Assembly (NCBI RefSeq): GCF_001194135.2
Contig: NC_068986.1
Location: 40,696,957-40,733,699, forward strand
DNA length: 36,743 nucleotides
Direction of reading: 5' to 3'
Origin: Octopus bimaculoides
Lineage: Eukaryota
In this document: positions 1 through 24,330 of the stretch, piece after piece
How positions within the stretch are numbered: position 1 is the stretch's first letter
Layout of the letters: each line of letters begins with the position of its first letter
Notes under the pieces: generated by a model
What the model saw: the letters and a program-made list of their open reading frames with translations, nothing else
What the model was told of the DNA's origin: nothing
Database searches by the model: none
Program-made: the position numbers and the translations under genes

Positions 1-196
1 AAATTATAAAATTTCAATGAGTTCACTCCCCTGAATCTACAAGCACATTTCATCAAATGTGATAGGATTTATAGAATCGATTTTTAAATTTGTTTTTCTT
101 ATATTTTTGTGTAAATTTATGGTGAAGTTTTAAAGCAAAATATGCATAAATGTATTTTGATTTCATTGTTTCTTTTTAAAAAAAATTCTATTTCAG

Positions 197-294
197 ATGA
201 TGAAGCTAAGCCTATAGAAGAAAAAATGAACAAAATGGGACCTGGAGAAGCATATTATATCAACTGTAATTTACGTGATGAAGCACAAATCAAA
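197..294 (+). CDS. HSD17B14: copy A exon 3 (98 nt) [32 protein letters not shown]
   Basis: tttcag acceptor, gtaagg donor; 97/98 identical to copy B exon 3. Confidence 0.92.
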
Positions 295-1946: not shown

Positions 1947-2016
<70 letters not shown>

Positions 2017-2771
2017 NNNNNNNNNNNNNNNNNNNNNNNNNNNNNNNNNNNNNNNNNNNNNNNNNNNNNNNNNNNNNNNNNNNNNNNNNNNNNNNNNNNN
2101 NNNNNNNNNNNNNNNNNNNNNNNNNNNNNNNNNNNNNNNNNNNNNNNNNNNNNNNNNNNNNNNNNNNNNNNNNNNNNNNNNNNNNNNNNNNNNNNNNNNN
2201 NNNNNNNNNNNNNNNNNNNNNNNNNNNNNNNNNNNNNNNNNNNNNNNNNNNNNNNNNNNNNNNNNNNNNNNNNNNNNNNNNNNNNNNNNNNNNNNNNNNN
2301 NNNNNNNNNNNNNNNNNNNNNNNNNNNNNNNNNNNNNNNNNNNNNNNNNNNNNNNNNNNNNNNNNNNNNNNNNNNNNNNNNNNNNNNNNNNNNNNNNNNN
2401 NNNNNNNNNNNNNNNNNNNNNNNNNNNNNNNNNNNNNNNNNNNNNNNNNNNNNNNNNNNNNNNNNNNNNNNNNNNNNNNNNNNNNNNNNNNNNNNNNNNN
2501 NNNNNNNNNNNNNNNNNNNNNNNNNNNNNNNNNNNNNNNNNNNAGGGTAAAAACCAAAAACAAAATCAAGAGATTTGGTGGATAAAATTTGAAGAAAAGC
2601 AACAAAAATTCAATAGGTTATAGCAGTACGTACGTTTTGTACAAACTTCATTTATTCATGTTCATGTTCTCACTACATGAATAAATGAAGTTTGTACGAA
2701 ATGTACGTACTGCTATAACCTATTGAATTTTTGTTGCTTTTCCTCAAATATATATATATATATATATATTC

Positions 2772-2804
<33 letters not shown>

Positions 2805-5800: not shown

Positions 5801-8800
5801 GTGGACCAAAGTGACCACCCATGATTCAGAAAAGTCTGTAACCTGAAAAGGCTTTGGAACCAAAGGTTCCTGAAAATGGATATCGTATCTACATTTATCA
5901 AATCATACTACGTTTTTGATAAGCTCCACATTAATACTAACCAAGTAAACCTATGATAAAAACCATTCCAGCCATGACCATTCTGCCTTTCTTTAAGGTT
6001 TAAAGGAGTCTGACATTACATTCTCTTATGTATCCTTATCTTCAAACAGTAGTGTGGAATATGAGAGGTTTAGCTGCTCATTCTAACAGCTTTAGTGATC
6101 ATATAGAAACTCCCCCATTGGCTCAGCCACTAATAAATATGTACCAGTTTATTTTTAGCATATTTTCCAGTTTCATTCTTATATTGAGAATACAACAAGC
6201 CTTCCATATTGGTCACTCAACCTGCAAGAAATACCAGCCAAATTTCCTTCTTGAAAGAATGATATATTGGAAAATATATTTGATACACAAAATAGTAATG
6301 GTCCCTCCATTTCTATAAGTAATTTGTGAGTTTGGGTTGCTCTTTTTAGCAGGTCAATCAACCGTACTGGATCATTTGATCAACAATGTATTATTCTACT
6401 GCTGTATTAATATAAGCAATACAAAATTTATCAACGAGTTCAGAATTGATAAAATAATTTCATATTACCTATTTTTTTCTGTTTTGTAAAACATTACATT
6501 CTTAATGACTTCCTACTTCACTCATTGTCACCTGATGTATTTGCCATGTATATGTATGTACACCTTGGCCTGTGACTGAACTCAATATACCATTATTTCA
6601 AGCAGTTTTCATACTCTTATCAGCTTTATTATATCCTCATACTCTAGATCAGACTATCTCAGTCATATCAACTTTGTGACACAATGAAAGTCAAATAAGA
6701 AATTAAGGTCAAATTTTGAATAGAAACTTTGTCATTCTTTAACATGTTTATCATTTATATTTTGCTGGCAGGGTGCTGTTGCAAGCATGTCAAAGGCATT
6801 GGCTATCAGTGAAGCTAAACATGGTGTTCGAGTGAATACGTGAGTAAAATTCTCTCTAAATATGAAACCCATTTCTGCAATTGTTGCTTCTTAGAGACAT
6901 TAGCAAACTTTTTGAGAGGTACCACTGAAAATTTGGCTTCAATCTAATAATAGTAATAATGGGTTTATTTATACGGTGCTCAGGTGTTCTACAGCTCATC
7001 AAAAAATGGTAGAAGAGTGGACAAAAAGCAGCAATAAGTCCAGTAAGAAAGGCAGCAATGAGAACCAAAAGTGCATCCATAGAAAAGCGGATAAAAACTA
7101 CAAGAAGTACAGAAAATCAAGCAGTAAAAGTGTCATAAACAGTGTATAAGCATTTCAGGAGTATTGTTGGCAAATTTCTGGAATCATGGAATTTTTTAGA
7201 GATGCTCTGTTTTGACAGCTAATATGAGTACATTATTCCGTGCTTTAATAATTCTGAGCAAGAAAAAACTGTTTCTATAAGCCATGAGTGCTACTCTGCT
7301 TTTTGGTTTTATAAGCTTGTTTATGGGTAGTAAAGTTAAAAAATTGGATAAAGATGGTGGTAATCTTATGAGCTTCTACAGAGTCACTTGCAAGATGTTG
7401 AAACTTTAGTGTGTCAATACCCAGAGAAGCAAGATGTTCAAGATATGATAAGGGGCTGACAGAGGGTATTTGTCTGGTTATACATCTCTGGACAGCTTCT
7501 AGTAGAATGATATTCTGGACACGATGTCAATTATGGACAAGTGATGCAAACTATAAGTGTGGATGTACTCAAATCATATATAGGTTTAAATAAATAGCAA
7601 ATGAGCAGCTGACAAAGGTCTTACTCGGTGATGCTATGATATCTTCAGCCTTTTTGATTATTTTGGAAATGTAGTTTATCTAACAAATTGTTATTGACAA
7701 ACATACCTAAATTATGTTCAGTAGCAGACCATAGCAATGCAACATGTGCAATTAACTACTGCATATCAGAATATGCTGTATGTCCTCAGTCTGACAGAAG
7801 TATGATACAACTGGAAAAGCAGATCACACAATGTCATTCGACTGTTTATATGCATACCATAAATCTGCTCAATAAAAACTGACTTGCAGTGCTGTCTTAA
7901 GGTATGGACAAGCAGGGTAGTTATCCAGGAGCGCCCATGACACTGGGGTCTAATGCTACTTTATGTTGTAGTTTGTTGTCAATAACTACAATGACCATAG
8001 TTCATTGCTTTGCTTACAGACCCATAATACAGTCAAGATGTCCCTGATGACCTAAGTTTTTGGTAATTAAACAGTCTCATTATAAAATATGAATTGTTTA
8101 CATTAGTGTTTCCCAGCCTATTTTTTCCCCAGGCTCCACTTATTGTAGATGCCAGTACATTCATTTCTCCTGGGGACATGTTGTGGCTTGCTGTCAATAA
8201 ATACAATGACCATAGTGCATTACTTTGCTTGCAGACCCATAATGCAGTTAAGATGTCCTAGATGACCTAAGTTACAGAATAACTAATTGAATTGTACAAA
8301 CTTTATATCAAGCATTTACAATTATCTGAAATTTGGTGACACATTTGAAGTATGTTGAATTTCCTCGAAACTAAAATAGAATCCAGTAGCCATACGTTCT
8401 AATAATGGTAGTGAATAAAAAGACCACTTATCTCATACACAAAAAGAAAAAAAATTACTCTTAAGTAGCTACATGCAAGTCTTTTTCTAGTATCTTAATG
8501 ATCCAGTTCACTGAATGCAATACTTTGGAGACAAAACCTACAGTTGCTTCTAGAGTAAATATGTATGAGGTTGTGCTGAAAAGTTCCTGGCTTTGGATAA
8601 AAAAAATACAAGAGGGTCAGTTAATTAGGATTTTATTAAACATATTCCCATCTCAGATTCATATGCCTGTTGTAGCAGTGCTTCAGTTTTTCTAAGCCTT
8701 GTAAAAGAACTCAGAAGGTTGGGTCTCTAACCAGGCCTTTCACGAAATCCTTAAAGCCAGGAACTTTTCAGCACTACCTCATAACTATTTTCATTTGAGA

Positions 8801-11800
8801 TAAAATAAAAGTAAGGGTGTTATTGAAGTATTGTAAAGATATATAAATAGTTAATTTAAATATTCAAAGGCATATATATCATTATCATCATCATCGTCGT
8901 CGTTTAACATCTGCTTTCCATGCTAGCATGGGTTGGACGATTTGACTGAGGACTGGTGAAACCAAATAGCTACACCAGGCTCCAATCTGATTTGGCAGAG
9001 TTTCTACAGCTGGATGCCCTTCCTAACGCCAACCACTCAGAGAGTGTAGTGGGTGCTTTTATGTGCCACCGGCATGAAGGCCAGTCAGGCGGTACTGGCA
9101 ACGGCCACGCTCAAAATGGTGTATTTTATGTGTCACCTGCACATAAAATACACCGTATATATATATATATATNNNNNNNNNNNNNNNNNNNNNNNNNNNN
9201 NNNNNNNNNNNNNNNNNNNNNNNNNNNNNNNNNNNNNNNNNNNNNNNNNNNNNNNNNNNNNNNNNNNNNNNNNNNNNNNNNNNNNNNNNNNNNNNNNNNN
9301 TATATATATAGGCATATACATGTGAGTGTAATAAGAAATTGGCTTCTCAATCACATGGTTCCTGTTTCTGTCCCACAACATAGCACCTTGTACAAGTATC
9401 TTCTATTATACTTACAGGCCGACAAAAAACTTGTGAGAGGATTTGATTGACAGAAACTGGAAGAAGCCCATCATATATATAAATATATGCCTGTATCTAT
9501 GTGTGTGTGCCTTTGTGTTTGTCCGTTACCACTGCTTGACAACTAATGTTGGTTTGTTTACATCCTCGTAACATAGCAATTCAGTGTAAGAGACTGATAA
9601 AATAAATACTAGGCTTTAAAATTAGATACTGGGATTGATTCCTTTGACTAAAACCCTTCAAGGCGGTGCCCCAAAAGATCCACACTGAATGACTGAAACA
9701 AGAATAAGTTAAGATATATATGGCTGATGTAGGCAACCCTTCCTTCTGTCTATCACAAAAACAACCAACAAGTGGAATGACCCAATGGTACTATGAGGTT
9801 AAAGTAGGTCCACATGACAAGATATACAATAGTTCATTGATGTTAGGAGTGGGGAGAAGAGAACAGTTTGTAATGAATTGGTGCTCTTGCCTGTGTGTCT
9901 GAAATTGCTTCTTCCTTGCACATGTTACAAAGTTAATGCTGGTTGTTGTACAACAAAGATCAGAGATGTGGCTTACAATGACTTAGGAAAATACTTTCAA
10001 AATTTTTTGTCTTTTTAGAATTTCTCCTGGAGCCATATGGACACCTCTGTGGGAAGAAGTAATGTCCAAGGCAGAGAATCCAGAAGAATTTTACAATGAT
10101 GGAGTGTCTTACCAGGTGAGAAATATTTCACAAATGTGTTTGGCTGTAAGGTTATGAAACATCTTTCCCAATCTCTTGATTTAGAGTTCAGCCTTTCCAT
10201 ATGGTACATTGGGGAAGTGTTTTCTCTTAAATTCCCAGACCAACTAAAGCTTTGTGAATGGATTTGGCAAACAGAAACTGAAAGAAGCTCATCATGTGTG
10301 TATGTTTGTATCTCCTTGACATTGCATGATAGTTATAAACGCTGCTCACACAGTAGCACACAGTATTGACTTATAAAAAACGTTTAATATACTTTATAGT
10401 ATACGCCATATGTAAACAAACAAGTTTGTTTTTCGAAGCGCCGAAATGTATGGTAGAACAAGTAGAAAGATAAATTTTATTCAACGCATAGATACTGAAC
10501 AGTATCAATATAAAGGATAAAATTCTTTTTTCGTTTTAAAAGCAGAAAAATTTGTCGGCAGCTAGCCATGATGACCGGACTCACATCCCTCTAATATCCG
10601 GTTAGAATGTTTTACCATTTAAGCTAAACCGCCTGACCGCCAAATTCTTCTGCAATTTAAGAAGATATAGAATCATCTAGGAATGCTAGATGTCGTATAG
10701 GTTACGCCATATGTAAACAAACAAGTTTGTTTTTACATCCCGACAAGTCATTAATAAATGATTTTCAATGCCATACAAGCTGTATTATGCATTTCCAATG
10801 TTATGTGAGAGCATGTCTGACCATGGGATGATATCACCCTGCTTGGAAATAGGTGAGGGTTAGTGACAGGAAGGGCACCCAGCTGTAAAAAATCTGATGA
10901 GATTGGTGCCATTAATGTCCCTCTCAGACTTTGTTGCAAGTCAACACCTGCAGAAAAGAACAGAGCAAGGAGGAAGGTCCAAAGAGCTGATGCATGGGAA
11001 GGAAGAACTGCATGTAGTAGTTAACATGAGACTTCCTGGCATATGGATGCAACAGTAAGTGATGAAATTAAAGAGGTGAGCAAGTCAAGAATCCCTGAGT
11101 GGAAATGGCATGAGCCCAGCCAGCACTGAGCAGCAGTGAACATTATAGATGAGTTCAAAAAGCAGTGGAAAAACCATGATGATGATAGTAAAGCTCACTT
11201 TGCAACCATGTGGTTTCAGGTTTAGTCCCACTGCATGGCACTATGAGCAAGTGTCTTCTACTACAGCCCAAAGAAGACCAATACCTTCTGACTATTGGTA
11301 TTGGTTTATTTACATCTCTGCAACTTTAAAAATATGTACTGCAATTGATATGTTTAACCATGGGATACCTCTTACTCCATTCTCTTTTGTGTGTGGTTTG
11401 TTTGTACAAACGGTAAAGCTATAATCCTCTCCTGAATACTTTATTGATGTTTCATAACTGTAAAATAGACAAAATTGAAATAAACAAACAAAAGATATCT
11501 TTATTGTATGGAAACTATATTGACAAGGACACATTATGTGAGGGACCCTGATGTTAGTGTGTGTAACATACATAGATAGACACACATGTATATAAATACA
11601 TATATTATGCCCCCTAGCGTCTGTTACTACCACCATTTCTGACATTGATTTAATGATGTTTGCACAAGTGTGTAAATATTCTCTAGCACTGCTTGTTGCC
11701 AATTATCTCAGTCCTTTGTTATCTCCTCTATGAGGATCAGCATCCAGAGTTCAGTCTTCTTGGGTCTCCATTTCCACAGATTTCAACTTTGAATACTTTT

Positions 11801-14800
11801 GTAGTAAGCTATTTTAATGGCCACATCATAGCACTGTTGTACTATGGCATTCTCCAGCCGATCAGGGCTGGGCATATATGAATATCAAAGGCAGTTCTCT
11901 GTCCATGAAGTGAAGTGGGAGTTTTTAATGTTATCAGATAGATGCCAGATGAGCAACATTTCTCTTGGAACAGCCTCATTGTTTTTCACACCAACTTCAC
12001 ACCTCTAACTCTAAATGTCTAGCCACTCTCAGCTTGCTACATCATGAACAGCCTATTTCACTTATGCCCACTTCACTCCATGAAATTCTTGATGATATCG
12101 GCCCACTACTCTGGTCTTGTTAGGAACAGTAGATTTTTATTTAAGCTAGCTCCATTTCTGTGAGCTTATGATGATTTCCAGCTGAACCTATTTTTCAAAC
12201 ATATGTAGAAATGCTTTCTCTGACTGATGCACACACTCCCTGGTTATGCTCTTATTACTTGTTAGCTTTTGTGATAATTTAATAAATTACATTATTTGTT
12301 TAAAAATTGCCTTCTGATATTCCATTACACAGCTTCTCAAAAGCTCACTCACAGGACTTTTCTATGAAAACTTTCATACTAGAAATTGGTGACCACACTC
12401 ACTAAACTTTTCTTCAGATATCTGTCATCATCTATATGTACCACATGCCTGTACTAGTGCATTCTTTCTTGTACTCTGCAAATTTTTTTGCTTGCTGTCA
12501 CTGATTTCCAAATTTGATATATTGATGTTGTAGTAACGCCTGCGCATGCATAGTCTTACGCATGCTTAGAATTAAACAAGCAAGCGTTTCCCGCTCAATT
12601 CATTCTCTTTCTCGCTGGCCAGCGATTGAGCATGTACGTGTGAGCAAGCTGTCTCTACATCTTTCGGACTTACACAAGACAGCTCGCTCACAACTACAGA
12701 ACAACGTCCCCACAACTATGCTCATACACACACATCACCAATTGTAAAGATATGTATGTTTACCACCTGAATAAATGTTGTTTAAGTTGTTTAGTCTGGA
12801 GTTCAGCGTTCCGTTATATTCTTAATTTTATAGTAGGAAGTCAGGTATACAATCTAAAGATGTATAACCCACTTTCCTATAATGTAATTTTTCATGCTGA
12901 ATCCAAATTTGAGATTCATTTATTCCTGAGAAAAAATTCAGAAAAATCTTACAGCAGTTCAAAGTTTGATCATTTTTAGTCAATCAAAAAACATGAATCA
13001 GAAGCTGGCATTTTTTGCATGATAGTTGTCTGTCACAAAAGGATTGACAGCAGCAACAAAATGAGAGCAAAATGTTATGAAAGTTTTAATGAGCTTTAAT
13101 GAATAAAGTCTTGAGAAATATTCCAGCTTCTTCATATTATGTCTCTCTTTACACAACTTGTTTTTAGCTACAACACCCTTGTCTCCAAAGTAAGAAGCTG
13201 CATCCTCTTGGTATCCATTTTCTCCATCAAACATGAAAGGTTACAAGATTTTGCAGTGGTAATACTGTATTTAGATATAGAATTGTAATGTGGAAAATGT
13301 CCAGGAAAACAGGTCAAATTATGAAAATGAGGTACAAAGAATTAAGGTTGGAAAATATGTGAGCAAACAAGGTAGACTATGGCTTTGCTTGTTGTTATGG
13401 AAACAGACTCCAGTGTGAGGTTTATGGTCATGTGTATTATGGTGGTTTTTGATGGGCTAAAATTACCCCAAATTTGCAAACTTTAAAAGCTTTTTAAAAC
13501 TTTTTATTTATTAATTTATGACCAAAATTTATTTCATTGTCATAATTAGTATACGAAACTAAATTGGTATAAACAAATTTTAAAACAACTGGAACAAAAT
13601 TGAACAAATAAGGAAATCTGTGACAGCAACCAAAAAGATTCTACTCTACATTTGATTCCTATCATACTGAATCAGCTTATTTAAATGCTGTCATTTATAT
13701 ATACAGACATTACATGTCCAGTGTGTGAAGGTGCATGGCTCAGTGGTTAGAGTGTCGAGCTTACAATCGCGAGGTTGTGAGTTTGAATCCTGAACCGGGC
13801 TGTGTGTTGTGGTCTTGAGCAAGACACTTTATTTCATGTTGCTCCAGTTCACTCATCTGTAGAAATGAGTTGCGACGTCACAGGTGTCAAGCTGTATGGC
13901 GTTTGCCTTTCCCTTGGATAACATCGGTGGCATAGAGAGGGAAAGCTGGTATGCATGGGCGCCTGATGGTCTTCCAGAAACAACCTTGCCCGAACTTGTG
14001 CCAGGGAGGGTAACTTTCTAGGTGCAATCCCATGGTCACTCGTGACCGAAAGAGGTCTCAGCAACATGTCCAGTAATAGCATAGACCTTCAATGACTTTT
14101 TACCACTGTTCTGAACTCTGGGCTGTTCTTTCTGCTTCTTTCCAGTTGGAATGTTAAATCATCATCATCATCATCATCATTTACCATCTGCTTTCCATGC
14201 TGGCATGGTTTGGATGGTTTGACATGGAGCTGGCTAGGAGGGAGCTGTCCAGACTCCAAATGCCTTTTGTGGCATGGTTTCTATGTCTGGCTGCCCTTCC
14301 TAACACCAGTCACTTAACAGAGTATGCTGGGTCCTTTTTACATGCCTCCAGCATGGGTGCGTTCATACAGCACCAGCACGGGTGCTTTTTAAGTGACACT
14401 CACACCTAAAAGGACAATCCTGTATGTGTGGAAGACAGTGATTTTACTTAGCTTGATATGTCTTATCAAGTACAGCGAATCCCCACACCTCCTGGTCCCT
14501 TGTCATTTCCTCATTGAGGCCCAGCATCCAAAGATCCTTTCTCAGCACTTTGTCCCATGTCTGCCTGGGTTTACCCCCTCCACAGGTACCTTCCGCAGGT
14601 ACCCTCCACAGCTAGAGCTTGACACTCCTTTATGCAGATGTCCTCTGTCCACCTACAAACAACTAATAATTATTGTTTATTAAGAACAACTTCCATTAAT
14701 TAAATATTTATGTTTTTTGTTTGCAGGTTATGGGTCGTATGGGAACACCTTCAGAGATTAGTACAGCATGTCTTTACCTAGCAGCAGATGGCACATTTTG

Positions 14801-14876
14801 TACTGGTATGGATATGAATGTTTCTGGAGGAATAGATATTTCTGTTGGCAGCAAGAGTGAAGTTACTCCATCTTAA
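197..14876 (+). CDS. HSD17B14: HSD17B14-like short-chain dehydrogenase/reductase, copy A (5'-partial; coding exons 3-9)
   Basis: Manual splice: join(197-294,2874-2940,3183-3274,4867-4971,6772-6839,10019-10115,14727-14876) = 677 nt. All introns GT-AG, phases consistent, TAA at 14874-14876. Motifs: [37 protein letters not shown]. The match to HSD17B14 is from my recall of the human protein; no search was run. Confidence 0.93.
624..1397. mobile_element. hAT-like non-autonomous TIR element (about 45-bp TIRs beginning CATGGGTGCTAGTATA)
   Basis: 624-665 is the reverse complement of about 1357-1397. Flanks CGCGCATG (616-623) and CATGCATG (1398-1405) are consistent with a CpG-decayed 8-bp TSD. Confidence 0.6.
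760..1127 (-). mobile_element. tRNA-derived SINE (family 2)
   Basis: Minus-strand head with A-box-like TGGCCCACTG and B-box-like GTTTCGATTCC; related partial copy at 34660-34837. Confidence 0.8.
1945..2016. repeat. (CA)n microsatellite running into an assembly gap
   Basis: Seen directly. Confidence 0.99.
2587..2749. repeat. Near-perfect palindrome: 75-bp arms, 13-nt loop
   Basis: 2587-2661 vs reverse complement of 2675-2749: 3 mismatches. Confidence 0.95.
2749..2825. repeat. Compound microsatellite (TA)n-(GAT)n-(TATG)n
   Basis: Seen directly. Confidence 0.95.
2874..2940 (+). CDS. HSD17B14: copy A exon 4 (67 nt) [22 protein letters not shown]
   Basis: ttgccag / gtaagt; SDR NNAG motif. Confidence 0.95.
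3183..3274 (+). CDS. HSD17B14: copy A exon 5 (92 nt) [31 protein letters not shown]
   Basis: ttttccag / gtgatt; carries the alpha4 Asn (VNL). Confidence 0.93.
4266..4650 (-). mobile_element. SINE family 1, diverged full-length copy
   Basis: Reverse-complement similarity to 17355-17728 along its length. Confidence 0.8.
4867..4971 (+). CDS. HSD17B14: copy A exon 6 (105 nt) [35 protein letters not shown]
   Basis: atttag / gtaagt; catalytic Ser and YxxxK. Confidence 0.95.
6772..6839 (+). CDS. HSD17B14: copy A exon 7 (68 nt) [23 protein letters not shown]
   Basis: tggcag / gtgagt; GVRVN motif. Confidence 0.95.
7887..8046. mobile_element. Short TIR element (CAGTGCTGTCTTAA...TCAAGATGTCCCTG), hAT-like MITE
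   Basis: Imperfect 14-bp terminal inverted repeats; 3' part duplicated at about 8178-8273. TSD not clear. Confidence 0.5.
8566..8781. mobile_element. Tc1/mariner-type MITE (216 bp)
   Basis: 29-bp TIR TGAGGTTGTGCTGAAAAGTTCCTGGCTTT with 1 mismatch; TA on both sides (8564-8565, 8782-8783). Confidence 0.88.
8884..9150 (-). mobile_element. (GAT)n-tailed retroposon 3' end (RTE-LINE-like or partner SINE)
   Basis: (CAT)n on + followed by a conserved body; further copies at about 14160-14400, 18710-19115 and 24655-24897. Confidence 0.7.
9320..9708 (+). mobile_element. SINE family 1, diverged copy
   Basis: Collinear with 17355-17728. Confidence 0.8.
10019..10115 (+). CDS. HSD17B14: copy A exon 8 (97 nt) [32 protein letters not shown]
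   Basis: tttttag / gtgaga; PG motif followed by the lid helices. Confidence 0.94.
10402..10734. repeat. Pair of perfect 32-bp direct repeats 301 bp apart
   Basis: TACGCCATATGTAAACAAACAAGTTTGTTTTT at 10402-10433 and 10703-10734. Confidence 0.95.
12529..12858 (+). mobile_element. Candidate solo LTR (330 bp)
   Basis: Begins TGTAG and ends CTAAA (one change from CTACA); GATGT on both sides (12524-12528, 12859-12863); AATAAA at 12770-12775; CpG-richer than the flanks. Confidence 0.5.
13728..14058 (+). mobile_element. tRNA-derived SINE (family 3)
   Basis: A box TGGCTCAGTGG and B-box-like GTTTGAATCC, followed by a non-tRNA body (TTGAGCAAGACACTT...). Confidence 0.78.
14160..14400 (-). mobile_element. 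(GAT)n-tailed retroposon 3' end
   Basis: Similar to 8884-9150. Confidence 0.65.
14727..14876 (+). CDS. HSD17B14: copy A exon 9 (150 nt) [49 protein letters not shown]
   Basis: tttgcag acceptor; GRMG and TG..VSGG motifs; TAA stop. Confidence 0.95.
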   Translation, partial: VMGRMGTPSEISTACLYLAADGTFCTGMDMNVSGGIDISVGSKSEVTPS

Positions 14877-15042
14877 GGAACTCAGAATAATGGAGAACAA
14901 AATGAAAAGAAGGAAAAGGAAAATAAATTTATGCTGTTAGATAATTGATATTTTCCAAATTTGGGATTAATATTTTTCTACAATAACTTGAATAATTTTT
15001 GAAAATATATCATATTTGCTTGTAATTTAAAGTGTTTTCAAG

Positions 15043-15061
15043 TCAATAAAGACTTTATTGA
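15043..15061 (+). terminator. Putative polyadenylation signal of copy A within a palindrome (TCAATAAAG A CTTTATTGA)
   Basis: AATAAA at 15045-15050, about 170 nt after the stop; conserved in copy B. Confidence 0.6.
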
Positions 15062-15403
15062 TTTTGTCAGTTGGAAATTTTCTGTAGCAATTACATAGTT
15101 AATTAGCTTAATGATTCTGAGAATGGCATGACTTTCATATCATCTCATTTTTTTATCAAAGCTAAGACGTTCTAAATAAGAAATCACAAAGGTCTGTTTT
15201 TGAAAAAGAGATTTTGTAATATTCACGCCTTGTTGTCAAAAGTTATGAATGAACTCACTTCATTCTCATATCTTTCTCAAAATATATAAATGAAGTGTTT
15301 GCACTAACTCAGAATTGAAACCTGACTGGAATTTCAACTTGCTGATAGCTAATCTGCTGCTGTGCACTATTCTTCATATAGGTCAGTATTAATACTTGCA
15401 GGA

Positions 15404-16143
15404 TTCCACTGAGGTTGTCTTTGACTTTCATCCTTTTAGGGTTAATGAAATAAGTATTAGTTGAGCACTTTATTTGATATAATTGACTTAAACCTTCCCC
15501 TGACACTGCTGGTCTTGTGCCAAAAAGTTGAAACCAATATCAATACTTGCAGGTATGTCTGTATGATTAAAAATTTCACTTTACAAGTCCATGTGGTTTT
15601 GTGTTCAGTTCCATTGCTTGGCACTTTGGCCAAGTGTCTTCAATGCTAACGATGCTATTGTACACCAATAATGAGATCAGCATTGTTTTAACGTCCACTC
15701 TTCCATGCTCACATGGATCACATGGAATATTGCTGAGATGGATTTTTCTACAGTTGGATTCCCTTCCTCTTACCAACCATCAAATTTTCAAGTCAGGTAA
15801 AAATGCTGGTGGGGTTGAGCTTGTCTTTCATCCTTTTGGTCTCAATGAAATAAGTGTCAGTTAAGTACTGGTGTTGGCATAATCGACTTAAATCCTCCTC
15901 TCACATTGCTGGCCTAGTGCCAAAATTTGGAACTAATATCAATACTTGCAGGTATGTCTGTATGGTTAAGAAGTTCACATTACAAATTCCATTGCACATG
16001 ACCTTACCCAAGTATCTTCAATGCTAACTGCGCTATGTCCACTTTTCTATGCTCATATGGATCAAATGGAATATTGTTGAGGTGGATTTTATTACAGCTG
16101 GATGCTCTTCCTCTTACCAACTGTCACATTTCCAAGTCAGGTA
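15404..16143. repeat. Imperfect tandem duplication of a composite repeat block (about 400-bp unit)
   Basis: Shared junctions, e.g. AATATCAATACTTGCAGGTATGTCTGTATG near 15536 and 15935; AAGTCAGGTA at 15790 and 16134. Confidence 0.75.
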
Positions 16144-17354
16144 GCATTTTCCCATGACCAGACATGTTTTGACAGAAAACTGGAAATGGAGGACACTTCT
16201 GGCATGAAGGTGTCTCTCATTTATGATTATTGCATGAAGTTAGAGCAAGGAGACAGTAACACACGCACATGTACACAGACATACACACACATACATATAT
16301 ACATGTATGTTGAAAAATATATTGGTATAAATTTGTATGAATATATACATATGTACATGTACAAATATATGCATATATATGTGCGTGTGTGTATGTGTGT
16401 CTCAGTGTGTGTGCAAATACCCCCCACATGACAGGTTTCTTTCAGTTTCCATCAATGAAATTCAGTTATAAAGGCTTTGGTCAGCTCAGGGCTATAGTAG
16501 AAAATATTTACCCATGGTACCACACTGAAACCATGTAGTTGGGCTGTTGACGTCTTACCATATGACCACTAAAATTAAATCAGTGTGCATATGTGTCTTT
16601 CAAATAGTATCAAAATTAAAATTAAATCAACCATTTTGTTTGGTGTATAGCAAAAGATCCACTGAAAAGAGGAATTGATTTTTTTAAAAAACCTCAAATT
16701 CATATTGTGATATTTAAAACGTTGCAATGATGTAAGCAACGCTACTGATTTTTTAAGGTTAACCCTGTGTAACACGATTTTTGACCTTAAGTAGCAACTG
16801 TTATTTCCTGTTACGTTTATTCAAACCCCAAAGAATCCCTCTCAACACATGGCTATGATGCTCCCCCACCACTCTTGCTCATGATCAGAGATGCATATAT
16901 TGTCAGCCATTAAGGGACATGCTCAAGAGAATAAGGTCAGGCAACTGACAAGCAAATCTGTGGTATTGAATAGAATATTTGTTATAATGATATTTCTGCT
17001 TCAGTAACTCAGCATTGAATCTGTGTGAAACGTAATGGAAAATAGGTCAGTTTCAAAACATTGGTGTTCAGGTCACAAAAGCAAAGTTTGAAGGGAATAG
17101 TGGTAATTTCCTTCAATTTCTAGAAAAATGCAAATAGGTTGAACGACACAAAAAAAAAAAAGAGAAAAATTTGTTACATGGTCTACTCTTACATGTTATG
17201 AAGAAGACAAAAGTTTAAATTTATTGTTGCAAAAATCGTGCATTATAAATGGCACCATATAGGACATCAAGTTACCATCTGGCTCATATGTAATGTTAAA
17301 ATATAATACACCTTATATATATTTGCTGTAGCATGTCTAAGTCATGAATTAGAA

Positions 17355-17728
17355 TGGTGTGGTAAGTAGCTTGCTTACCAACCACATGGTTCCGGGTTCA
17401 GTACTTCTGCGTGGCACCTTGGGCAAGTGTCTTCCACTATAGCCTCGGGCCAACCAAAGCCTTGTGAGTGGATTTAGTAGACGGAAACTGAAAGAAGCCC
17501 GTCGTATATATGTATATATATATGTGTGTGTTTGTCCCCCCAACATCGCTTGACAACCGATGCTGGTGTGTTTACGTCCCCGTAACTTAGCGGTTCGGCA
17601 AAAGAGACTGATAGAATAAGTACTAGGCTTACAAAGAATAAGTCCTGGGGTCGATTTGTTCGACTAAAGGCAGTGCTCCAGCATGGCCGCAGTCAAATGA
17701 CTGAAACAAGTAAAAGAGTAAAAGAGTA
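17355..17728 (+). mobile_element. SINE family 1, best-preserved copy
   Basis: tRNA-like head (GTGTGGTAAG...GGTTCAGT), central (TA/TG)n, tail ending in a GTAAAAGA repeat; many homologs in the window. Confidence 0.85.
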
Positions 17729-18497
17729 TGAATTTTTTGGTGGTGTTCTTGTTGGATTAGTCTAGTCTGTAATATTAATATTTCAACATGTGGTGCTTGT
17801 TGTTTAGCCCCAGGTCAGCCTGAGTCAAGCAGACATATGATCAAAAGCATTCTAGCCATAATCATTCTCTATGATGCCAGTGTCGCGTAACTGGTACTTA
17901 TGTCGGTGGCACGTAAAAAGCACCCTTTGAGTGTTGGACGATATGTTGTGCTTGAAAAGATCTATCAAACCAAGTACAATCGTAGTCATGGAAGATGCCA
18001 GTGTTGCATACCTGGCACGTAAAAAGCAGCCATGGAACTTTGGACCTCACAAGGGCAGTGAAAAGTGACCGAGACCTTAAGCAATATACATGCTTGAGAA
18101 GACCTGTCAAGCCAATATTTGTAAATTGAATGAATACAGTTATGTACCTACAATCTGATGTACTTCTTATACATACACAGAAGCATGCACGTTGATAGCA
18201 AACGACAAATCCAAACACAAAAACAGCAAAGGGACAGGAGTCCAATGAATATCATTAGTCTGAATTTGGAAAAAGGAAGGGAGTTAATCACACTTGTTTG
18301 GAATCTAAGGGAGGTAATCATGCCTGTTGTCCAGACTTAATTTATCGGTATTAACACGGGTTTCAGTCATCCTTCGATAAATTTTCACATCTTTTTTCAC
18401 GCAGTACCGGACCAAATATCCGGAAAGCTTGTGAGCAGAGGTTGTCCGGATGCGTGCATTCACCAATTTGTTAGAGACATTCTATATATATATATGC

Positions 18498-18544
<47 letters not shown>

Positions 18545-18709
18545 AGTTTGGCAAAAGAGACCGATAGAATAAGTACTAGGCTTACAAAGAATAAGTCTGG
18601 GGGTCGATTTGTTTGACTAAAGGCANNNNNNNNNNNNNNNNNNNNNNNNNNNNNNNNNNNNNNNNNNNNNNNNNNNNNNNNNNNNNNNNNNNNNNNNNNN
18701 NNNNNNNNN

Positions 18710-19115
18710 GATTTGACTGAGGACTGGTGGACCAGGAGCCGACACCAGGCTCCAATCTGATTTGGCATGGTATCTACAGCTGGATGCCCTTCCTAACGCC
18801 AACCACTCCGAGAGTGTAGTGGGTACTTTTACGTGCCACCGGCACAAGGGCCAGTCAGGCGGTACTGGCGACGGCCACGCTCGAAATGGTGTATTTTACG
18901 TGCCACCTGCACAGGAGCGAGTCCATCGGCACTGGCAACGATCTTGCTTGAATGTCTTTTCACGTGCCAGGGAGGCGACGTTGGTAACAATCAACAACCA
19001 CGCTCGAAATAGTGTATTTTATGTGTCACCTGCATAGGGGCCAGTCCATCGGCACTGGCAACAATCTCGCTTGAATGTCTTTTCACATGCCAGGAAGGCG
19101 ATGTTGGTAGCGATC
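18710..19115 (-). mobile_element. (GAT)n-tailed retroposon fragment with an internal about 123-bp tandem unit
   Basis: Near-identical to 8940-9150; units at about 18872-18992 and 18995-19115. Confidence 0.7.
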
Positions 19116-19557
19116 ATGCTGGTGATAGACCCCAGTATGCAACTGGTACTTAATTTATCAACCTCAAAAGTATGAAAGGCAAAGTCGACCTCAGCGGAAT
19201 TTGAAGGTATTAATATTAATTTCTTAAATGAAGTGAGGTGCATAGCAGCAGTTTAGCTTTCAACAAGTTGAAATTCCAGTCAGGTTTCAATTCTGAGTTG
19301 GTGCACACTCTTCATTTACATATCTTAGGAAAGATATGTAAATGAAGTGAGTTCATTCGTGACTGTTGGCAACAAGGTATGAATGTTACAAACCCCACTT
19401 TTTTTTTTCCAAAATGTAGACCATTTTTATATAATTCTATTCAGGAAGTCTCGAGCTTCAGTGAAAAATAAGATGATGTGAAATTCATGCTATTCTCAGA
19501 ATCATTAAGCTAATTAACTGTGTAATGACTACAAAAAATTTCCAACAGACAGAAAAG

Positions 19558-19574
19558 CAATAAAGTCTTTATTG
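19558..19574 (-). terminator. Putative polyadenylation signal of copy B within a palindrome (CAATAAAG n CTTTATTG)
   Basis: Minus-strand AATAAA at 19573-19568, homologous to the copy A site. Confidence 0.6.
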
Positions 19575-19734
19575 ACATTAAAACACTATGATGTATTTTC
19601 AAAAATGCACATACAAAAGTATTTATGCTATTGTTGAAAAATATAAATCCCAAATTTGGAAAATATCAATTATTTAACAGCATAATATATTTTTTCTTTT
19701 TCCTTTCTATTTTTTCTCCATTATTTTGCGTTCC

Positions 19735-19884
19735 TTAAGATGGAGTAACTTCACTCTTGCTGCCAACAGAAATATCTACTCCTCCAGAAACATTCATATC
19801 CATACCAGTACAATATGTGCCATCAGCTGCTAGGTAAAGACATGCTGTACTAATCTCTGAAGGTGTTCCCATACGACCCATAAC
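19735..19884 (-). CDS. HSD17B14: copy B exon 9 (150 nt)
   Basis: Mirror of 14727-14876; F>Y, I>V and one synonymous change; TAA at 19737-19735. Confidence 0.95.
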   Translation of the reverse strand, partial: VMGRMGTPSEISTACLYLAADGTYCTGMDMNVSGGVDISVGSKSEVTPS

Positions 19885-21792
19885 CTGCAAAGAAAGAAGA
19901 GAAGCATGTGATTAATGGAAGTTGTTCTAAATTATATGTAGTCATTAGTTGCTAATAAGCGAATGATTTTTGAGACAATAAACATTCCAACTGGAGAGAA
20001 GCAGAAAGGACAGCCCAGAGTTGATAACAACAGTGAAAAATCATTGAAGGGAGAGACAGACTTAAGAAGAAGAAAAAACTGGTGTAAATTGAGGAAGATT
20101 TGGTTGCTACTTCTAGCAATGGAACAATCACATAGTAGCTACCTCATACACTCAAATTAGCATACATTTTTCTGTACTGCTTGAAATTAAAAAAAAATTT
20201 TTTTAGAGGAAGATGTTTAGTTTTCAATACCAGACAATGAATAGTAATCTTGGATTTCAACCCATTGGTAAGCGAGATCCAAAGGAAGACAATGGCTAGA
20301 TTTGAACTTATCTACTCATAGATACAAATGCACTAGAGAGAGAAAATGACATAGGAAGAATGAAACTGGTGTAAATCGAGGAAGATTTGGCTGCCATGTA
20401 ATAGTATCTACCCATAGATACATAGATTACATAGCATTTGTTTTAAGTAAATGAAACAACAAAAACTATTATAGCTTACATATAAGATTAAATAATATGA
20501 GAAGGTACCCAAAAGTAATTGGAAATGTTCTCTGTGAAACAAACCCATTGTAGTTCAGGCTTCTGCAGCTAGAAGCCACTTGATGCGACCCTCAGGCATC
20601 AGTCTACCAACTGGTGTCATTGGGTGAAATTGTACTGCCACATGGTGCATTTTTATTTTGTAGTGCTTCTTCCCTATTTGTCGATTTTTGTGATGGCTGA
20701 AATGAAGGAACAGCATGCTTCCATGAAATTCTGCAGGTGTTGACTTGCAACAAAGTTCAAGAAGAACATCAATGACACCAATCTAATCAGGTTTTCTACA
20801 GCTGGGTGCCCTTCTTGTCACTAAACCTCAGCTGTTTCCAAGCATCATCCCATGGTCAGACATGTTCTCACAGAATATTGGAAATGCATAATATAGCTTG
20901 TATGATATTGAGAATCATTTGTAACTATCATGCAGTATCAAGGAGATACAAATATACACACATCATGGGCTTCTTCCAGTTTCTACTTACCAAATCCATT
21001 CACAAGGCTTTGGTTGGTTCGGGGTTTTAAATGAAAACACTTGCTAAAGGTGCAACATAGTAGGATTGAACCCTCATTCATGCAGTTAGGAGATAATCTT
21101 AACTTCACAACCAAGCATATTTGTGAAATATTTCTCACCTGGGAAGATACTCCTTCATTGTAAATTTTTTCTGGATTCTCTGCATTTCTCTTTAATTCTG
21201 CCCACAAAGGTGTCCATATAGCTCCAGGAGAAATTCTAAAATGGCAAAAAATTAAAGTATCAAATATCATGACAAATATCAAGTATCATACAAATTGTTT
21301 TGTAACTTAAAGTATGTAAAGATAATTTATTTTGTTGTATTTAGTAATAAATAATGTACTTACATGTTTGCAACAATACAAAAATCCCTAAAACGATGCA
21401 GAAATTAAGTTACATCCTCAGGTGAAAGAAAAATCCGAAAGTCTCAACATAACATTTCAGAAAGAAACAGTTTCACACTCTCACAGGTAAGAGCAGAAAC
21501 TCGTTACAAATAGTTCTCTTCACTCCACTTCTAACTTCACTGAAATATGCTATATTTTGTCACAGGGCACCTACAAAGGGGAATTATCCAAACTCCAAAG
21601 AATTCCTCTCAACACATAGCTATGATGCTCTCCCACTACTTCTGTTCATGAACAAAGATGCACATATCGTCAGTCATTAAGGAACATGCTCAACTGGTTA
21701 TGGTCAAACAACTGACAAACAAATGTGTGGTATTGAGCAGAATATTTGCTGTAGCCCATCTTTTATACCAAGACAAAACATGTACAACAATT

Positions 21793-21823
<31 letters not shown>

Positions 21824-24285
21824 TCATTATTTAAGACGTCACACAGTATCCAATATCATGATGTTGTTGACTGAAGATGTGCCTAGCAGGGGTCTGTACT
21901 GTCTGTCAAGTCACAACAAGGACCTCAGACAGACAGTACTTTATGCAATATGCATGCAATTCCAAGTAATGCTGATTTTTGCAATACACCTATATTGTAA
22001 GTATCTCTAAAGTTTCCAGATGTTTTTTCAGCTTGGGTGGTATTGAACTTAATGTTCTAATGACAACAGAGACAACCTTTATGTTTGACTCTTGTAGCTG
22101 CCACACATTAGTGATCTCAATTCTCAGGTTTTCATATTTATCAGTCTTTCCTCTTTCTTTCATGATGAAATGTTGATGTCCTGGCACTGCCGTCAATTAT
22201 TAGGCACTCCTGTTTGTTGCTCCTAAAGGCTACTATATTTGGCCTTTGGTGCTCTAACACCTTGTCTGTCTGGAAGTCAAAGTCCCAGAGGATTTTTGCC
22301 TTCCCTTTTTCATCCATTACCTTTTCCAGTGTACTTTGGTATGAAGCACCCATTACCTTGTATCCATACTTGCGGCATAGTAGCCAGTGAAGGTTTTGGG
22401 CTATCTTGTCATGTCTGTGCTTGTACTCTTTCTGTGCAAGACTTTCACAAGCACTAACAATGTGAGTCACGCTTCCAACCCTCTTCCCACACATTTTTTA
22501 GAGGTTTGTTGCACTTCTGTGGTATATATCCCTTTTCACTGAGTTGGTATTCAATGCCTGGTCCTGGGCAGCGGTGATTAGGCTTTCAGTTTTCTTTTTT
22601 AGGTCACATTTGTTGAACCACCTCCATGATACTTCCTGGTCTTTTAATTTGTTAGTTTCACTGTGGAACTGACCATGTAATTCCATGCGGAGTAAGGTTT
22701 CTTCTCTCTCGTTGGCTGTTCATGATCAGAATTCATGAGCATTCTCAAGTTATCTTTGGTAATTCCTTCAGCATTAGCAGCATACTGTAGCAAGTCTTGT
22801 TTGCTGTTTACCAAATATTCTACCATGTTTCTTCTTTCACTGTTGATGCACTCCCATATGCTAATCAGTTCACATCCACCTTTATCCCTCTTCCTGTAGA
22901 GCCTGTGTACAATCGCCTTAGGGTGGAGGGCAATATGCATTGTCATTGTCTTTCAGGTAGTGCGATCGAGTTGGTTAATCTCCACTTGTGTCCATTTCAA
23001 GATGGGTACACTGTAGCAGACTACAGCAACAGTTCATATGTTGATGGCAGTCACAAGGTTCCTTGAGTTTAGTTTTGATTTCAAGAGAAGTTTGAGGCAC
23101 TTCAAATATGCAGTGATGACCTTGTCTTTCATTTCTCTGAGCAAGATATTGTCCAGTTCCAGGATCCCAAGGTACTTGTACCCATCATCATCTGGGTCTT
23201 CCATTCTCTCTCCATTTGGCAATTCTATGCCCTTATTGAAGCCAAATTTTGTTTGCTGCCTCTCAAAAAGGTTGGTTAGAGAGCTAAGAAGCAACAATTG
23301 CAATAATCGGTTTCATATTTGGAAAGAATTTTACTCACGTATTCACTCGAACACCATGTTTAGCTTCACTGATAGCCAACGTCTTTGACATGCTTGCAAC
23401 AGCACCCTACCAACAAAACATAAATGATAAATATGTGAAAGAATGGTAATGGTTTACATATTACACAACATCTTCAGTGCTGCTTTTTTATATTCTCAAT
23501 GTTTTCCCCTAAATTTTAAGTATTTTTTTCTATATATTTTGTGCTGTTTGTATATTTTTCTATATTTTCTCTAAGTGTTGCAGTGCATTTGTGCCTTGTA
23601 ATGGATATCTAGATGTGTAATGGATTTTTAAAACTATAATTCAAGGTTTTAGAAAATCAATACTTGTGCATGAACCTCTTGAAAAACATGTTATATATTT
23701 TTTTAATATTGAAGTTTAATTAATTAAACAAGGTAACCAATAGCTTTCTATATTTTCCTATCTGTTAACTTTAGAACACTCTTTATTAAACTTTCTCTTC
23801 AAAATGTGACATTAATTTTTTTAATTGTTTTTCAGGTGTCACAAAGTTGATACGATTGAGATAGTCTGATCTAGAGTATGCGGATATAATAAAGTCAATA
23901 AAAGTATGGAAACTGAGTTCAGTCACAGGCCAAGGTGTACATACATATACATGACAAAAATGTCAGTTGACAATAAAATGAGTCTGAAGTGGGGATGATT
24001 GACCTTCTAGAAAGAGCAACCAACACTCACAAATTACCCATAGAAATGGAGGGGCTATTACCAGCAGAATTGTTAACACACTGGACAAAATGCTAAGCAG
24101 TATTTCTTCCAGTTTTCCATGTTCTGAGTTCAAATTCCAACAAGGTCAACTTTGCTTTCATCCTTTTAGGATCAATAATATAAGTACCAGTTGTGCACTA
24201 GGGTTGATGTAATCGATGTTCCCCCACTCCCCTGAAATTGCTGGCCTTGTGCCAAAATTTGATTCCAATATTAATATATTTTATG

Positions 24286-24330
<45 letters not shown>

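What the first reader, a model, noticed from the sequence alone, without database searches (positions are those of the whole stretch)
10019..21235. Paralog divergence is concentrated in the SDR substrate-binding lid (exon 8)
Seen: A = LWEEVMSKAENPEEFYNDGVSYQ vs B = [23 protein letters not shown]. That is 9 amino-acid changes in 32 codons (11 of the 14 nt differences fall in amino-acid-changing codons; 3 codons are synonymous). The other six shared exons together have only 11 changes. Net side-chain charge of the exon shifts from -5 (A) to -1 (B). The catalytic Ser/Tyr/Lys and the His98/Gln153 pair are identical. Known: in SDRs the segment after the PG motif forms the flexible lid over the substrate, and human HSD17B14 has been re-assigned as an L-fucose dehydrogenase in addition to weak steroid activity. 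Inference: the two copies may be diverging toward different substrates.
Basis: partly seen in the sequence, partly recalled or inferred. Interest (0 to 1): 0.85.

Follow-up and report, generated by a model that had tools for sequence, protein, structure and literature searches.

The report
Octopus HSD17B14 twin genes, divergent lid
Two tail-to-tail copies of an octopus sugar/steroid dehydrogenase gene really do differ most in the exon for the flap over the active site. Most of that contrast is ordinary: the flap evolves fast in the whole enzyme family, and gene conversion has erased older differences from the other exons. Only one old six-residue run in one copy hints at a change of function.

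Summary
The window is Octopus bimaculoides and holds two convergent HSD17B14-like (L-fucose-dehydrogenase-like) SDR genes: A on the + strand (XP_052824417) and B on the - strand (XP_014781126). Exon 8 differs at 14 of 97 nt and 9 of 32 codons; the other six shared exons differ at 19 of 580 nt and 11 residues. The net charge of the exon goes from -5 to -1. The catalytic Ser, Tyr and Lys, and His98 and Gln153, are identical.

The N gap (18626-18709) lies in a repeat-rich spacer between the two stop codons and touches no reading frame.

The same gene pair exists in O. vulgaris, so the duplication predates that split. Introns differ by about 15% between A and B, against about 7% between orthologues. 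Three things explain the pattern:
- Residues 197-218 are the most variable stretch of the whole family, and exon-8 dN/dS is 0.78.
- The other exons have been homogenised by short gene-conversion tracts. Their dS is 0.07, and paralogues share species-specific states.
- A run of replacements at residues 198-203 (EEVM[S/N][K/N] to AELKRN) arose on the B lineage before the species split.

Four of the nine changes are O. bimaculoides-specific. A branch test for selection is not significant (p about 0.10). Substrate divergence is plausible but unproven.

The parts
197..14876 (+). Gene A (HSD17B14-like, XP_052824417), exons 3-9 within the window: 197-294, 2874-2940, 3183-3274, 4867-4971, 6772-6839, 10019-10115 (exon 8), 14727-14876 (includes the stop). 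Exon 2 lies upstream of the window. Exon 1 was not found in the assembly.
   Evidence: conserved exon lengths, AG/GT sites and an open frame. The translation equals residues 54-290 of P0002.
19735..36578 (-). Gene B (HSD17B14-like, XP_014781126), exons 1-9: 36491-36578 (ATG), 32780-32818, 30908-31005, 29089-29155, 28182-28273, 25311-25415, 23339-23406, 21139-21235 (exon 8), 19735-19884 (includes the stop).
   Evidence: the 804-nt ORF translates exactly to P0001 (267 aa).
10019..10115 (+). Exon 8 of A: PG motif plus lid (residues 187-218, [32 protein letters not shown]).
21139..21235 (-). Exon 8 of B: PG motif plus lid ([32 protein letters not shown]).
10053..10070 (+). Codons 198-203 of A (EEVMSK), the second half of the first lid helix (alphaFG1 in SDR nomenclature). 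This is close to the ancestral state.
21184..21201 (-). Codons 198-203 of B (AELKRN). This is the derived run, identical at 18 of 18 nt in O. vulgaris B. It is the only statistically robust cluster.
14877..19734 (.). Intergenic spacer between the two stop codons. It is repeat-rich, and part of it (17036-18516) is inverted relative to O. vulgaris.
18626..18709 (.). Assembly gap inside the spacer, non-coding, flanked by repeat copies.
14679..15463 (+). 3' arm of the inverted duplication (exon 9 plus its flank). It pairs with 19140-19932 at 83% identity; exon 9 within it is 98% identical.

Best explanation
A and B are a conserved, tail-to-tail pair of HSD17B14-like (L-fucose-dehydrogenase-like) classical SDR genes. 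They arose by inverted duplication well before the O. bimaculoides/O. vulgaris split.

Short gene-conversion tracts centred on exons, up to about 150 nt where measured, have repeatedly homogenised most coding exons between the copies. In exon 1 this also involves the third paralogue, C. The introns have kept diverging.

Exon 8 has kept its old divergence and now differs as much as the introns do. It encodes the two lid helices, which are the least constrained part of this enzyme family. Its nine differences come from two layers:
- An old run of replacements at residues 198-203 in the first lid helix, derived almost entirely on the B lineage. These remove one acidic and add two basic side chains next to the invariant Trp197.
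- Four recent O. bimaculoides-specific changes in the second helix: K209E and E213D in A, F210I and Y217S in B.

Shown: the gene models, the age and layout of the duplication, the conversion mosaic, the polarity and age of each lid change, and the near-neutral exon-wide rate.

Inferred: that the B-specific run alters lid electrostatics and hence substrate preference or kinetics, and that selection or local mismatch density keeps conversion out of exon 8.
For: Identity of the genes:
- Best hits are O. bimaculoides HSD17B14 models, followed by metazoan HSD17B14/L-fucose dehydrogenase proteins.
- The best solved structure by sequence is human HSD17B14, E=5e-74. The Foldseek top hits are the same protein, TM 0.89-0.96.

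Age of the duplication:
- The same C, B and inverted A layout, with nine exons of identical length, is present in O. vulgaris.
- Intron informative sites: 1571 support orthology, 16 group by species, 10 show the third pattern.
- Intron divergence between A and B is 0.147-0.158, against 0.062-0.072 between orthologues.

Gene conversion:
- dS of the non-lid exons between A and B is 0.070-0.089, about the same as between orthologues (0.061-0.107). There are 9 synonymous differences where 19.8 are expected from the introns (p=0.006).
- In those exons there are 5 orthology-type against 7 species-type informative sites. The contrast with the introns gives Fisher p=3.5e-11.
- Paralogues share species-specific derived states at codons 98, 105, 157, 187, 262, 265 and 266. 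In exon 1, O. vulgaris A, B and C share Q8 and V14, while O. bimaculoides B and C share K8 and I14.
- O. vulgaris A and B are identical at 87 of 88 nt in exon 1, plus about 35 nt upstream and 25 nt downstream, and then diverge.
- Flanking introns carry fixed A-versus-B differences to within about 10-20 nt of the exons.

The lid is a hot spot:
- Residues 197-218 are the top-ranked 21-residue entropy window among 118 homologues.
- Exon-8 dN/dS is 0.39-1.8 in orthologue pairs and 0.78 between A and B. Maximum-likelihood omega is 0.45 for exon 8 and 0.31 for the rest.

The B-lineage run:
- The codon table with outgroups C and Argonauta polarises the changes.
- Maximum likelihood puts all pre-speciation exon-8 change on the B stem: 0.207 substitutions per codon there, 0 on the A stem, and 0.027 on the B stem for the rest of the gene.
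- Clustering gives p=0.0006-0.002.
- Lys201 is unique in the family.
Against: - No test shows positive selection. The two-ratio test on the B stem gives 2dlnL=2.69 (p about 0.10), and exon-wide dN/dS is below 1.
- The later conservation of AELKRN in both B genes is not informative. Only about 0.9 changes are expected there under neutrality, so seeing none means little.
- A run of 6-7 nt changes within 17 nt could come from a multi-nucleotide mutation event rather than from selection.
- Exon 2 also kept two old synonymous A-versus-B differences, so escape from conversion is not unique to exon 8 and could be chance.
- Only two octopus species and one outgroup were available.
- There are no expression or activity data.
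- Gene A's first coding exon, which carries the Rossmann glycine motif, is missing from the O. bimaculoides assembly.
Confidence: 0.6

Rival explanations
1. One reading: positive selection for different substrates has driven divergence across the whole lid exon. On this view B, or both copies, is neofunctionalising, and selection actively keeps gene conversion out of exon 8.
For: - All radical differences fixed in both species lie at 198-202. The other fixed differences are conservative: E/D at 79, A/V at 103, S or A against T at 149, I/V at 254.
- The B stem carries only nonsynonymous change in exon 8, so omega runs to its upper bound.
- Lys201 is unprecedented at a position that is always small or aliphatic.
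- The charge shift is kept in both species: A is -5 or -4, B is -1.
- After the early burst B is the slower-evolving copy, with 6 and 3 lineage-specific replacements against 9 and 8 in A.
- Rat versus human HSD17B14 shows that few changes can switch sugar specificity (PMC11293516).
Against: - The likelihood-ratio test is not significant (p about 0.10).
- Exon-wide dN/dS is 0.78, and exon divergence equals intron divergence.
- 4 of the 9 changes are recent and split between both copies.
- The lid is the family's most variable region, and it also evolves fast between orthologues, with exon-8 dN/dS above 1 in the A and C orthologue pairs.
- After scan and rate correction the exon-level excess is marginal (p=0.026-0.067).
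Confidence: 0.25
2. Purely neutral mosaic. The lid is weakly constrained, a multi-nucleotide mutation hit the first lid helix of B, and conversion happened to miss exon 8. The two enzymes would then be functionally equivalent.
For: - dN/dS is close to 1 in many exon-8 comparisons.
- Exon-8 divergence matches the introns.
- Positions 198-205 have no family consensus.
- Exon 2 also escaped conversion.
- No selection test is significant.
Against: - The clustering of fixed differences is strong even with entropy-weighted sampling (p at most 0.002).
- Position 201 is not free in the family: it is only I, A, S, T, V or L in 117 sequences, yet B has Lys.
- Both copies are kept intact, with dN/dS 0.37-0.49 outside the lid, in two species.
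Confidence: 0.3
3. Relaxed constraint because copy A is decaying in O. bimaculoides. Its exon 1, which carries TGGxxGIG, is absent from the assembly, and the RefSeq model has an aberrant N-terminus.
For: - No exon-1 homologue was found in the 17.5 kb upstream of A's exon 2.
- The N-terminus of XP_052824417 is built from a start codon antisense to a pseudo-exon and from a repeat-like exon.
- ObiA has the longest exon-8 terminal branch (0.231) and an exon-8 dN/dS of 1.8 against OvuA.
Against: - Exons 2-9 of A are intact, with all splice sites present.
- dN/dS outside the lid is 0.37 against OvuA.
- O. vulgaris A has a complete exon 1.
- Four N runs lie in the upstream region where exon 1 could be hidden.
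- The older half of the lid divergence is on the B lineage, not on A.
Confidence: 0.1
4. Assembly artefact: the two copies are mis-assembled alleles, or a false inverted duplication around the gaps.
For: There are six N runs in the window. The scan's program also flagged a gap inside the span of the finding.
Against: - The gap-free O. vulgaris chromosome has the same inverted pair, with lids that match by orthology.
- A and B introns differ by about 15%, far above allelic levels.
- All gaps fall in introns or in the spacer.
Confidence: 0.02

Closest known systems
Human HSD17B14 (DHRS10/retSDR3), now identified as L-fucose dehydrogenase (PDB 5HS6, 5EN4, 1YDE; PMC11293516)
   Same: - Same fold: TM 0.89-0.96, rmsd 1.3-1.5 A, 42-43% identity. 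Sequence match E=5e-74.
- Shares NNAG, Ser-Tyr-Lys, His98 (human 93), Gln153 (human 148), the PG motif and the invariant Trp197 (human 192).
- The lid is the same helix-turn-helix after PG.
   Different: - The octopus has three paralogues (C, B, A) rather than one gene.
- A and B replace the near-invariant Asn191 (114 of 117 homologues) with Ala.
- The lid sequences are unrelated beyond Trp197 and Pro207.
- Human Tyr253 of the C-terminal tail aligns with Ser in the octopus proteins.
- The activity of the octopus enzymes is untested.
Rat versus human HSD17B14 (PMC11293516)
   Same: These are very similar sequences with different sugar specificity. The authors conclude that few changes shape substrate specificity.
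   Different: They are orthologues in different species, not paralogues, and the responsible residues are not mapped. That paper makes no claim about the lid.
Concerted evolution of duplicated genes with islands that stay divergent, for example primate L/M opsins, where tuning sites persist despite conversion. This comparison is from general knowledge and was not tested here.
   Same: Paralogue exons are homogenised within species, while a short functionally placed segment keeps old, fixed differences.
   Different: Here the conversion is confined to short tracts around exons and the introns are not homogenised. Selection on the retained island has not been demonstrated.

Membership tests
Classical short-chain dehydrogenase/reductase (Pfam adh_short / adh_short_C2) | N-terminal Rossmann glycine motif TGxxxGxG | tested here: inconclusive
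   B has T15-G-G-A-R-G20-I-G22. A's exon 1 lies outside the window and was not found in the assembly upstream of it. O. vulgaris A has the motif.
Classical short-chain dehydrogenase/reductase (Pfam adh_short / adh_short_C2) | NNAG motif, catalytic Ser-Tyr-x-x-x-Lys and PG motif | tested here: met
   N93-N94-A95-G96, S146, Y159, K163 and P189-G190 are present in A and B. Precomputed Pfam hits are PF00106, PF13561 and PF23441.
HSD17B14 / animal L-fucose dehydrogenase orthogroup | Closest sequence and structure relatives are HSD17B14 | tested here: met
   The top named homologues are HSD17B14/L-fucose dehydrogenase across metazoans. The best PDB match is 6gbt/5hs6 at E=5e-74. The first 35 Foldseek matches are all human HSD17B14.
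HSD17B14 / animal L-fucose dehydrogenase orthogroup | Family-invariant pocket residues (His98, Gln153, Trp197, Asn191 in octopus numbering) | tested here: inconclusive
   H98, Q153 and W197 are conserved in A and B. Asn191 (114 of 117 homologues) is Ala in both A and B of both species, whereas C and Argonauta keep Asn.
HSD17B14 / animal L-fucose dehydrogenase orthogroup | [quoted passage not shown] | not testable with these tools
   This needs an enzyme assay. The bacterial NCBIfam model FucosDh scores 161 bits (A 133.5), below its cutoff of 300. It is a bacterial equivalog model, so that result is not decisive.
Paralogues under concerted evolution (interlocus gene conversion) | Exons group by species or show paralogue dS no greater than orthologue dS, while introns group by orthology | tested here: met
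   Introns give 1571, 16 and 10 informative sites (orthology, species, third pattern); non-lid exons give 5, 7 and 1. dS of the non-lid exons is 0.070-0.089 between A and B and 0.061-0.107 between orthologues, while intron divergence is 0.15 against 0.07. Conversion tracts are seen in exon 1 and at the 3' end of exon 9.
Positively selected (neofunctionalised) duplicate | dN/dS significantly above 1, or above background, on the post-duplication branch | tested here: not met
   Exon-8 dN/dS between A and B is 0.78. The B-stem two-ratio test gives 2dlnL=2.69, which is not significant.

The most novel reading that the evidence does not exclude
Copy B has acquired a new substrate class. The Lys201/Arg202 pair, together with the loss of Glu198 beside Trp197 in the first lid helix, suggests an anionic or more polar ligand such as a sugar acid or uronate. 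On this reading selection preserves this six-residue island against the exon-centred gene conversion that homogenises the rest of the A/B/C cluster. The shared Asn191-to-Ala change would mark A and B together as having already left the ancestral L-fucose-type specificity that C retains.
Probability: 0.2. Interest if true: 0.5.

Novelty: new member of a known kind. Interest (0 to 1): 0.3.

Why it matters
If the B-specific lid run changes specificity, the octopus cluster would be a compact natural experiment. Three HSD17B14-type enzymes are kept more than 90% alike by gene conversion, with specificity differences confined to a few lid residues. That would help map what determines sugar versus steroid specificity in an enzyme whose physiological substrate was only recently reassigned.

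As it stands, the finding is a well-behaved example of two common things: substrate-loop divergence between enzyme duplicates, and concerted evolution of exons. It is also a caution against reading contrasts between exons as evidence of selection.

Tried and rejected
- Looked for a donor that could have templated the B-specific run (26-mer, up to 3 mismatches). Only the site itself matched in the window.
- Considered a compensated frameshift or micro-inversion to explain EEVMNK to AELKRN. By inspection, the nucleotide alignment fits only point substitutions.
- Searched for more cephalopod sequences. Only O. bimaculoides, O. vulgaris (hidden inside 90% clusters) and Argonauta hians were available, and no transcript-derived copies, so expression could not be assessed.
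- Searched for open papers describing the HSD17B14 lid or pocket residues. None were held, so statements about which lid residues face the pocket rest on helix periodicity and general SDR knowledge.
- Global MAFFT intron alignments overstate A-to-B distances (0.18-0.53). I replaced them with collinear blastn blocks.
- Rfam, tRNA and long-ORF scans of the region found nothing.
- The bacterial NCBIfam L-fucose dehydrogenase model scored below its cutoff.
- No octopus HSD17B14 literature was found.
Full report
**What is in the window.** The window is from Octopus bimaculoides chromosome CM046606. A self-comparison shows a large inverted duplication: 38-15463 on the + strand pairs with 31168-19140 on the - strand. 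Each arm carries an HSD17B14-like short-chain dehydrogenase gene, and the two genes lie tail to tail.
- Gene A (+ strand, XP_052824417) contributes exons 3-9 to the window: 197-294, 2874-2940, 3183-3274, 4867-4971, 6772-6839, 10019-10115 and 14727-14876.
- Gene B (- strand, XP_014781126) is complete: 36491-36578, 32780-32818, 30908-31005, 29089-29155, 28182-28273, 25311-25415, 23339-23406, 21139-21235 and 19735-19884.
- All exons have AG/GT boundaries. B translates exactly to the 267-residue RefSeq protein.
- A third paralogue, C (XP_014781128), lies beyond the window, upstream of B.

**Check of the observation.**
- Exon 8 differs at 14 of 97 nt and 9 of 32 codons. The other six shared exons differ at 19 of 580 nt and 11 residues.
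- 11 of the 14 differences are in replaced codons and 3 codons are synonymous.
- Exon charge is -5 in A and -1 in B. Ser146, Tyr159, Lys163, His98 and Gln153 are identical.
- Simple Fisher tests are significant (p=4.6e-4 and 5e-5).
- Once I allow for having scanned the whole protein and for family-wide rate differences, the exon-level excess is marginal (p=0.026-0.067).
- The run of five differences at residues 198-203 remains unusual (p=0.004-0.025).

**The assembly gap.** N run 18626-18709 lies between the two stop codons (A's ends at 14876; B's is at 19735-19737). That places it about 1.0 kb 3' of B and 3.75 kb 3' of A. It is flanked by copies of repeats found elsewhere in the window and is crossed only by spurious ORFs. 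The other five N runs are in introns. The gap-free O. vulgaris orthologues have the same nine exons. The gap therefore has no bearing on reading frames or on the finding.

**Family assignment.**
- The best homologues are metazoan HSD17B14/L-fucose dehydrogenase proteins.
- The best solved structure by sequence is human HSD17B14 (E=5e-74).
- An AlphaFold model of B (pLDDT 92.7) superposes on human HSD17B14 at TM 0.89-0.96.
- Exon 8 encodes the PG motif, then helix 195-202, a turn, and helix 207-216. Confidence there is 85-87, against 97-99 in the core. This is the SDR lid.
- The reassignment of HSD17B14 as L-fucose dehydrogenase is confirmed. So is the observation that the very similar rat enzyme lacks this activity (PMC11293516).

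**Age of the duplication.** O. vulgaris has the same arrangement: C, then B, then A inverted, each with nine exons of identical length and intact frames.
- In four-way intron alignments, 1571 informative sites group A with A and B with B. Only 16 group by species.
- In collinear blastn blocks, introns differ by 0.147-0.158 between A and B, and by 0.062-0.072 between orthologues.
- The duplication is therefore roughly twice as old as the species split.

**Why the other exons look so alike.**
- Outside exon 8, synonymous divergence between A and B is only 0.070 (O. bimaculoides) and 0.089 (O. vulgaris). That is no greater than between orthologues (0.061-0.107) and about half the intron value. 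There are 9 synonymous differences where 19.8 are expected (p=0.006).
- Orthologue dS matches orthologue intron divergence, so synonymous constraint is not the cause.
- Informative sites in those exons are 5 orthology-type against 7 species-type, in stark contrast to the introns (Fisher p=3.5e-11).
- Paralogues share species-specific derived states: codons 98, 105, 157 and 187, and a tract at 262-266 (S/T/P in O. bimaculoides against N/A/L in O. vulgaris).
- In exon 1 the three O. vulgaris copies share Q8 and V14. O. bimaculoides B and C share K8 and I14.
- O. vulgaris A and B are identical at 87 of 88 nt in exon 1, plus about 35 nt 5' and 25 nt 3', and then diverge.
- Flanking introns carry fixed A-versus-B differences to within 10-20 nt of the exons.
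- This is concerted evolution by short gene-conversion tracts centred on exons.
- Exon 8 is the exception. Its total divergence (14.4%) equals the intron level, and its dS is 0.196. The small exon 2 also keeps two old synonymous differences.

**The lid is a hot spot everywhere.**
- Among 118 homologues, residues 197-218 are the most variable 21-residue window of the protein. Positions 198-205 and 209-213 have no majority residue.
- Exon-8 dN/dS is 0.78 between A and B, and 1.8, 0.39 and 1.45 in the three orthologue pairs.
- Exon 8 holds 26%, 19% and 15% of the amino-acid differences in those orthologue pairs, against 41% for A versus B (p=0.049).
- Maximum-likelihood omega is 0.45 for exon 8 and 0.31 for the rest.

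**Anatomy of the nine differences.** With C and Argonauta as outgroups:
- Residues 198, 200, 201, 202 and 203 differ because of old change. The B lineage went from roughly E-E-V-T-N-K to A-E-L-K-R-N. The 18 nucleotides are identical in both B orthologues.
- A changed only T201M on its stem. ObiA later changed N202S.
- The other four differences are specific to O. bimaculoides: K209E and E213D in A, F210I and Y217S in B. O. vulgaris A and B are identical across 204-218.
- Of the eight A-versus-B differences fixed in both species, four lie at 198-202, and these are the only radical ones (p=0.0006-0.002 for such clustering).
- Lys201 of B is absent from all 117 homologues. That position is always I, A, S, T, V or L.
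- By helix periodicity, residues 200 and 201 face the same side as the invariant Trp197. This is an inference.

**Tests for selection.** I implemented a GY94-type model on exon 8. It places all pre-speciation change on the B stem: 0.207 substitutions per codon, against 0 on the A stem and 0.027 on the B stem for the rest of the gene. Omega on the B stem runs to its upper bound, but the gain in likelihood is not significant (2dlnL=2.69, p about 0.10). The later conservation of AELKRN has no statistical weight, because fewer than one change is expected there under neutrality. A multi-nucleotide mutation event cannot be excluded.

**Caveat on gene A.**
- A's exon 1, which carries the glycine motif, was not found in the 17.5 kb upstream of exon 2. 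That region holds four N runs.
- The RefSeq N-terminus is built from a start codon antisense to a pseudo-exon and from a repeat-derived exon.
- Exons 2-9 are intact, and dN/dS outside the lid is 0.37 against the O. vulgaris orthologue, which has a normal exon 1.
- Decay of A is therefore unlikely but not excluded.

**Verdict.**
- The exon-wide contrast mainly reflects a weakly constrained lid together with gene conversion of the other exons.
- The one feature that stands out statistically and biologically is the old, B-lineage-specific, charge-changing run at residues 198-203.
- Whether it changes substrate use needs enzyme assays and more octopod genomes.
- Interest is modest. This is a new instance of known phenomena in already annotated genes.

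Noticed in passing
window 10031-10033 (A) and 21221-21223 (B); codon 191: The near-invariant Asn after the PG motif (N in 114 of 117 homologues) is Ala in both A and B of both octopus species. Paralogue C and Argonauta keep Asn. C instead has Trp193 changed to Leu. The A/B pair as a whole may therefore have left the ancestral specificity.
   Followed up: partly
window 17036-18516, against L001 33931-32833: The central part of the spacer between the two genes aligns to O. vulgaris in reverse orientation (92.5% and 88.7% identity), while both flanking arms align directly. This fits a flip of the spacer by recombination between the inverted arms, or a complex rearrangement. In O. bimaculoides the block lies in the same contig as A's exons 8-9.
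   Followed up: partly
L003 9921-10070 (- strand), about 12.7 kb upstream of window position 1: A lone exon-9-like fragment, 88% identical to B's exon 9. It has TG instead of the AG acceptor, and SGG is changed to SEE. It is probably the relic of a fourth copy. No counterpart was seen upstream of O. vulgaris A.
   Followed up: partly
L003 10001-10021 and 10957-11115; copy at window about 13154-13296 (- strand): The odd 53-residue N-terminus of RefSeq XP_052824417 (gene A) starts antisense to that pseudo-exon and continues in an exon that has an 80%-identical copy inside A's intron 8. It therefore looks repeat-derived, and the annotated 5' end of gene A is doubtful.
   Followed up: partly
L001/L002 exon 1 (O. 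vulgaris A, B, C); window 36491-36578: Exon 1 shows three-way concerted evolution. All O. vulgaris copies share Q8 and V14, while O. bimaculoides B and C share K8 and I14. The O. vulgaris A/B tract is about 150 nt and includes about 35 nt of 5' UTR and 25 nt of intron.
   Followed up: yes
window 8939-9143 and 18710-18913; 17593-17672 and 18546-18625: Two of the assembly gaps (9173-9300 and 18626-18709) lie beside copies of the same interspersed repeats. The gaps look like repeat-induced assembly breaks.
   Followed up: no
window 28274-29088 (B intron 4): B's intron 4 is 815 nt, against 224-246 nt in A and in both O. vulgaris genes. This is an O. bimaculoides-specific insertion. A's intron 8 is 4.6 kb against 1.25 kb in B, in both species.
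   Followed up: no
window 32780-32818 (B exon 2): RefSeq isoform X2 of B (254 aa) skips the 39-nt exon 2. That removes 13 residues ([13 protein letters not shown]), corresponding to strand beta2 of the Rossmann fold, so this isoform is probably non-functional.
   Followed up: no
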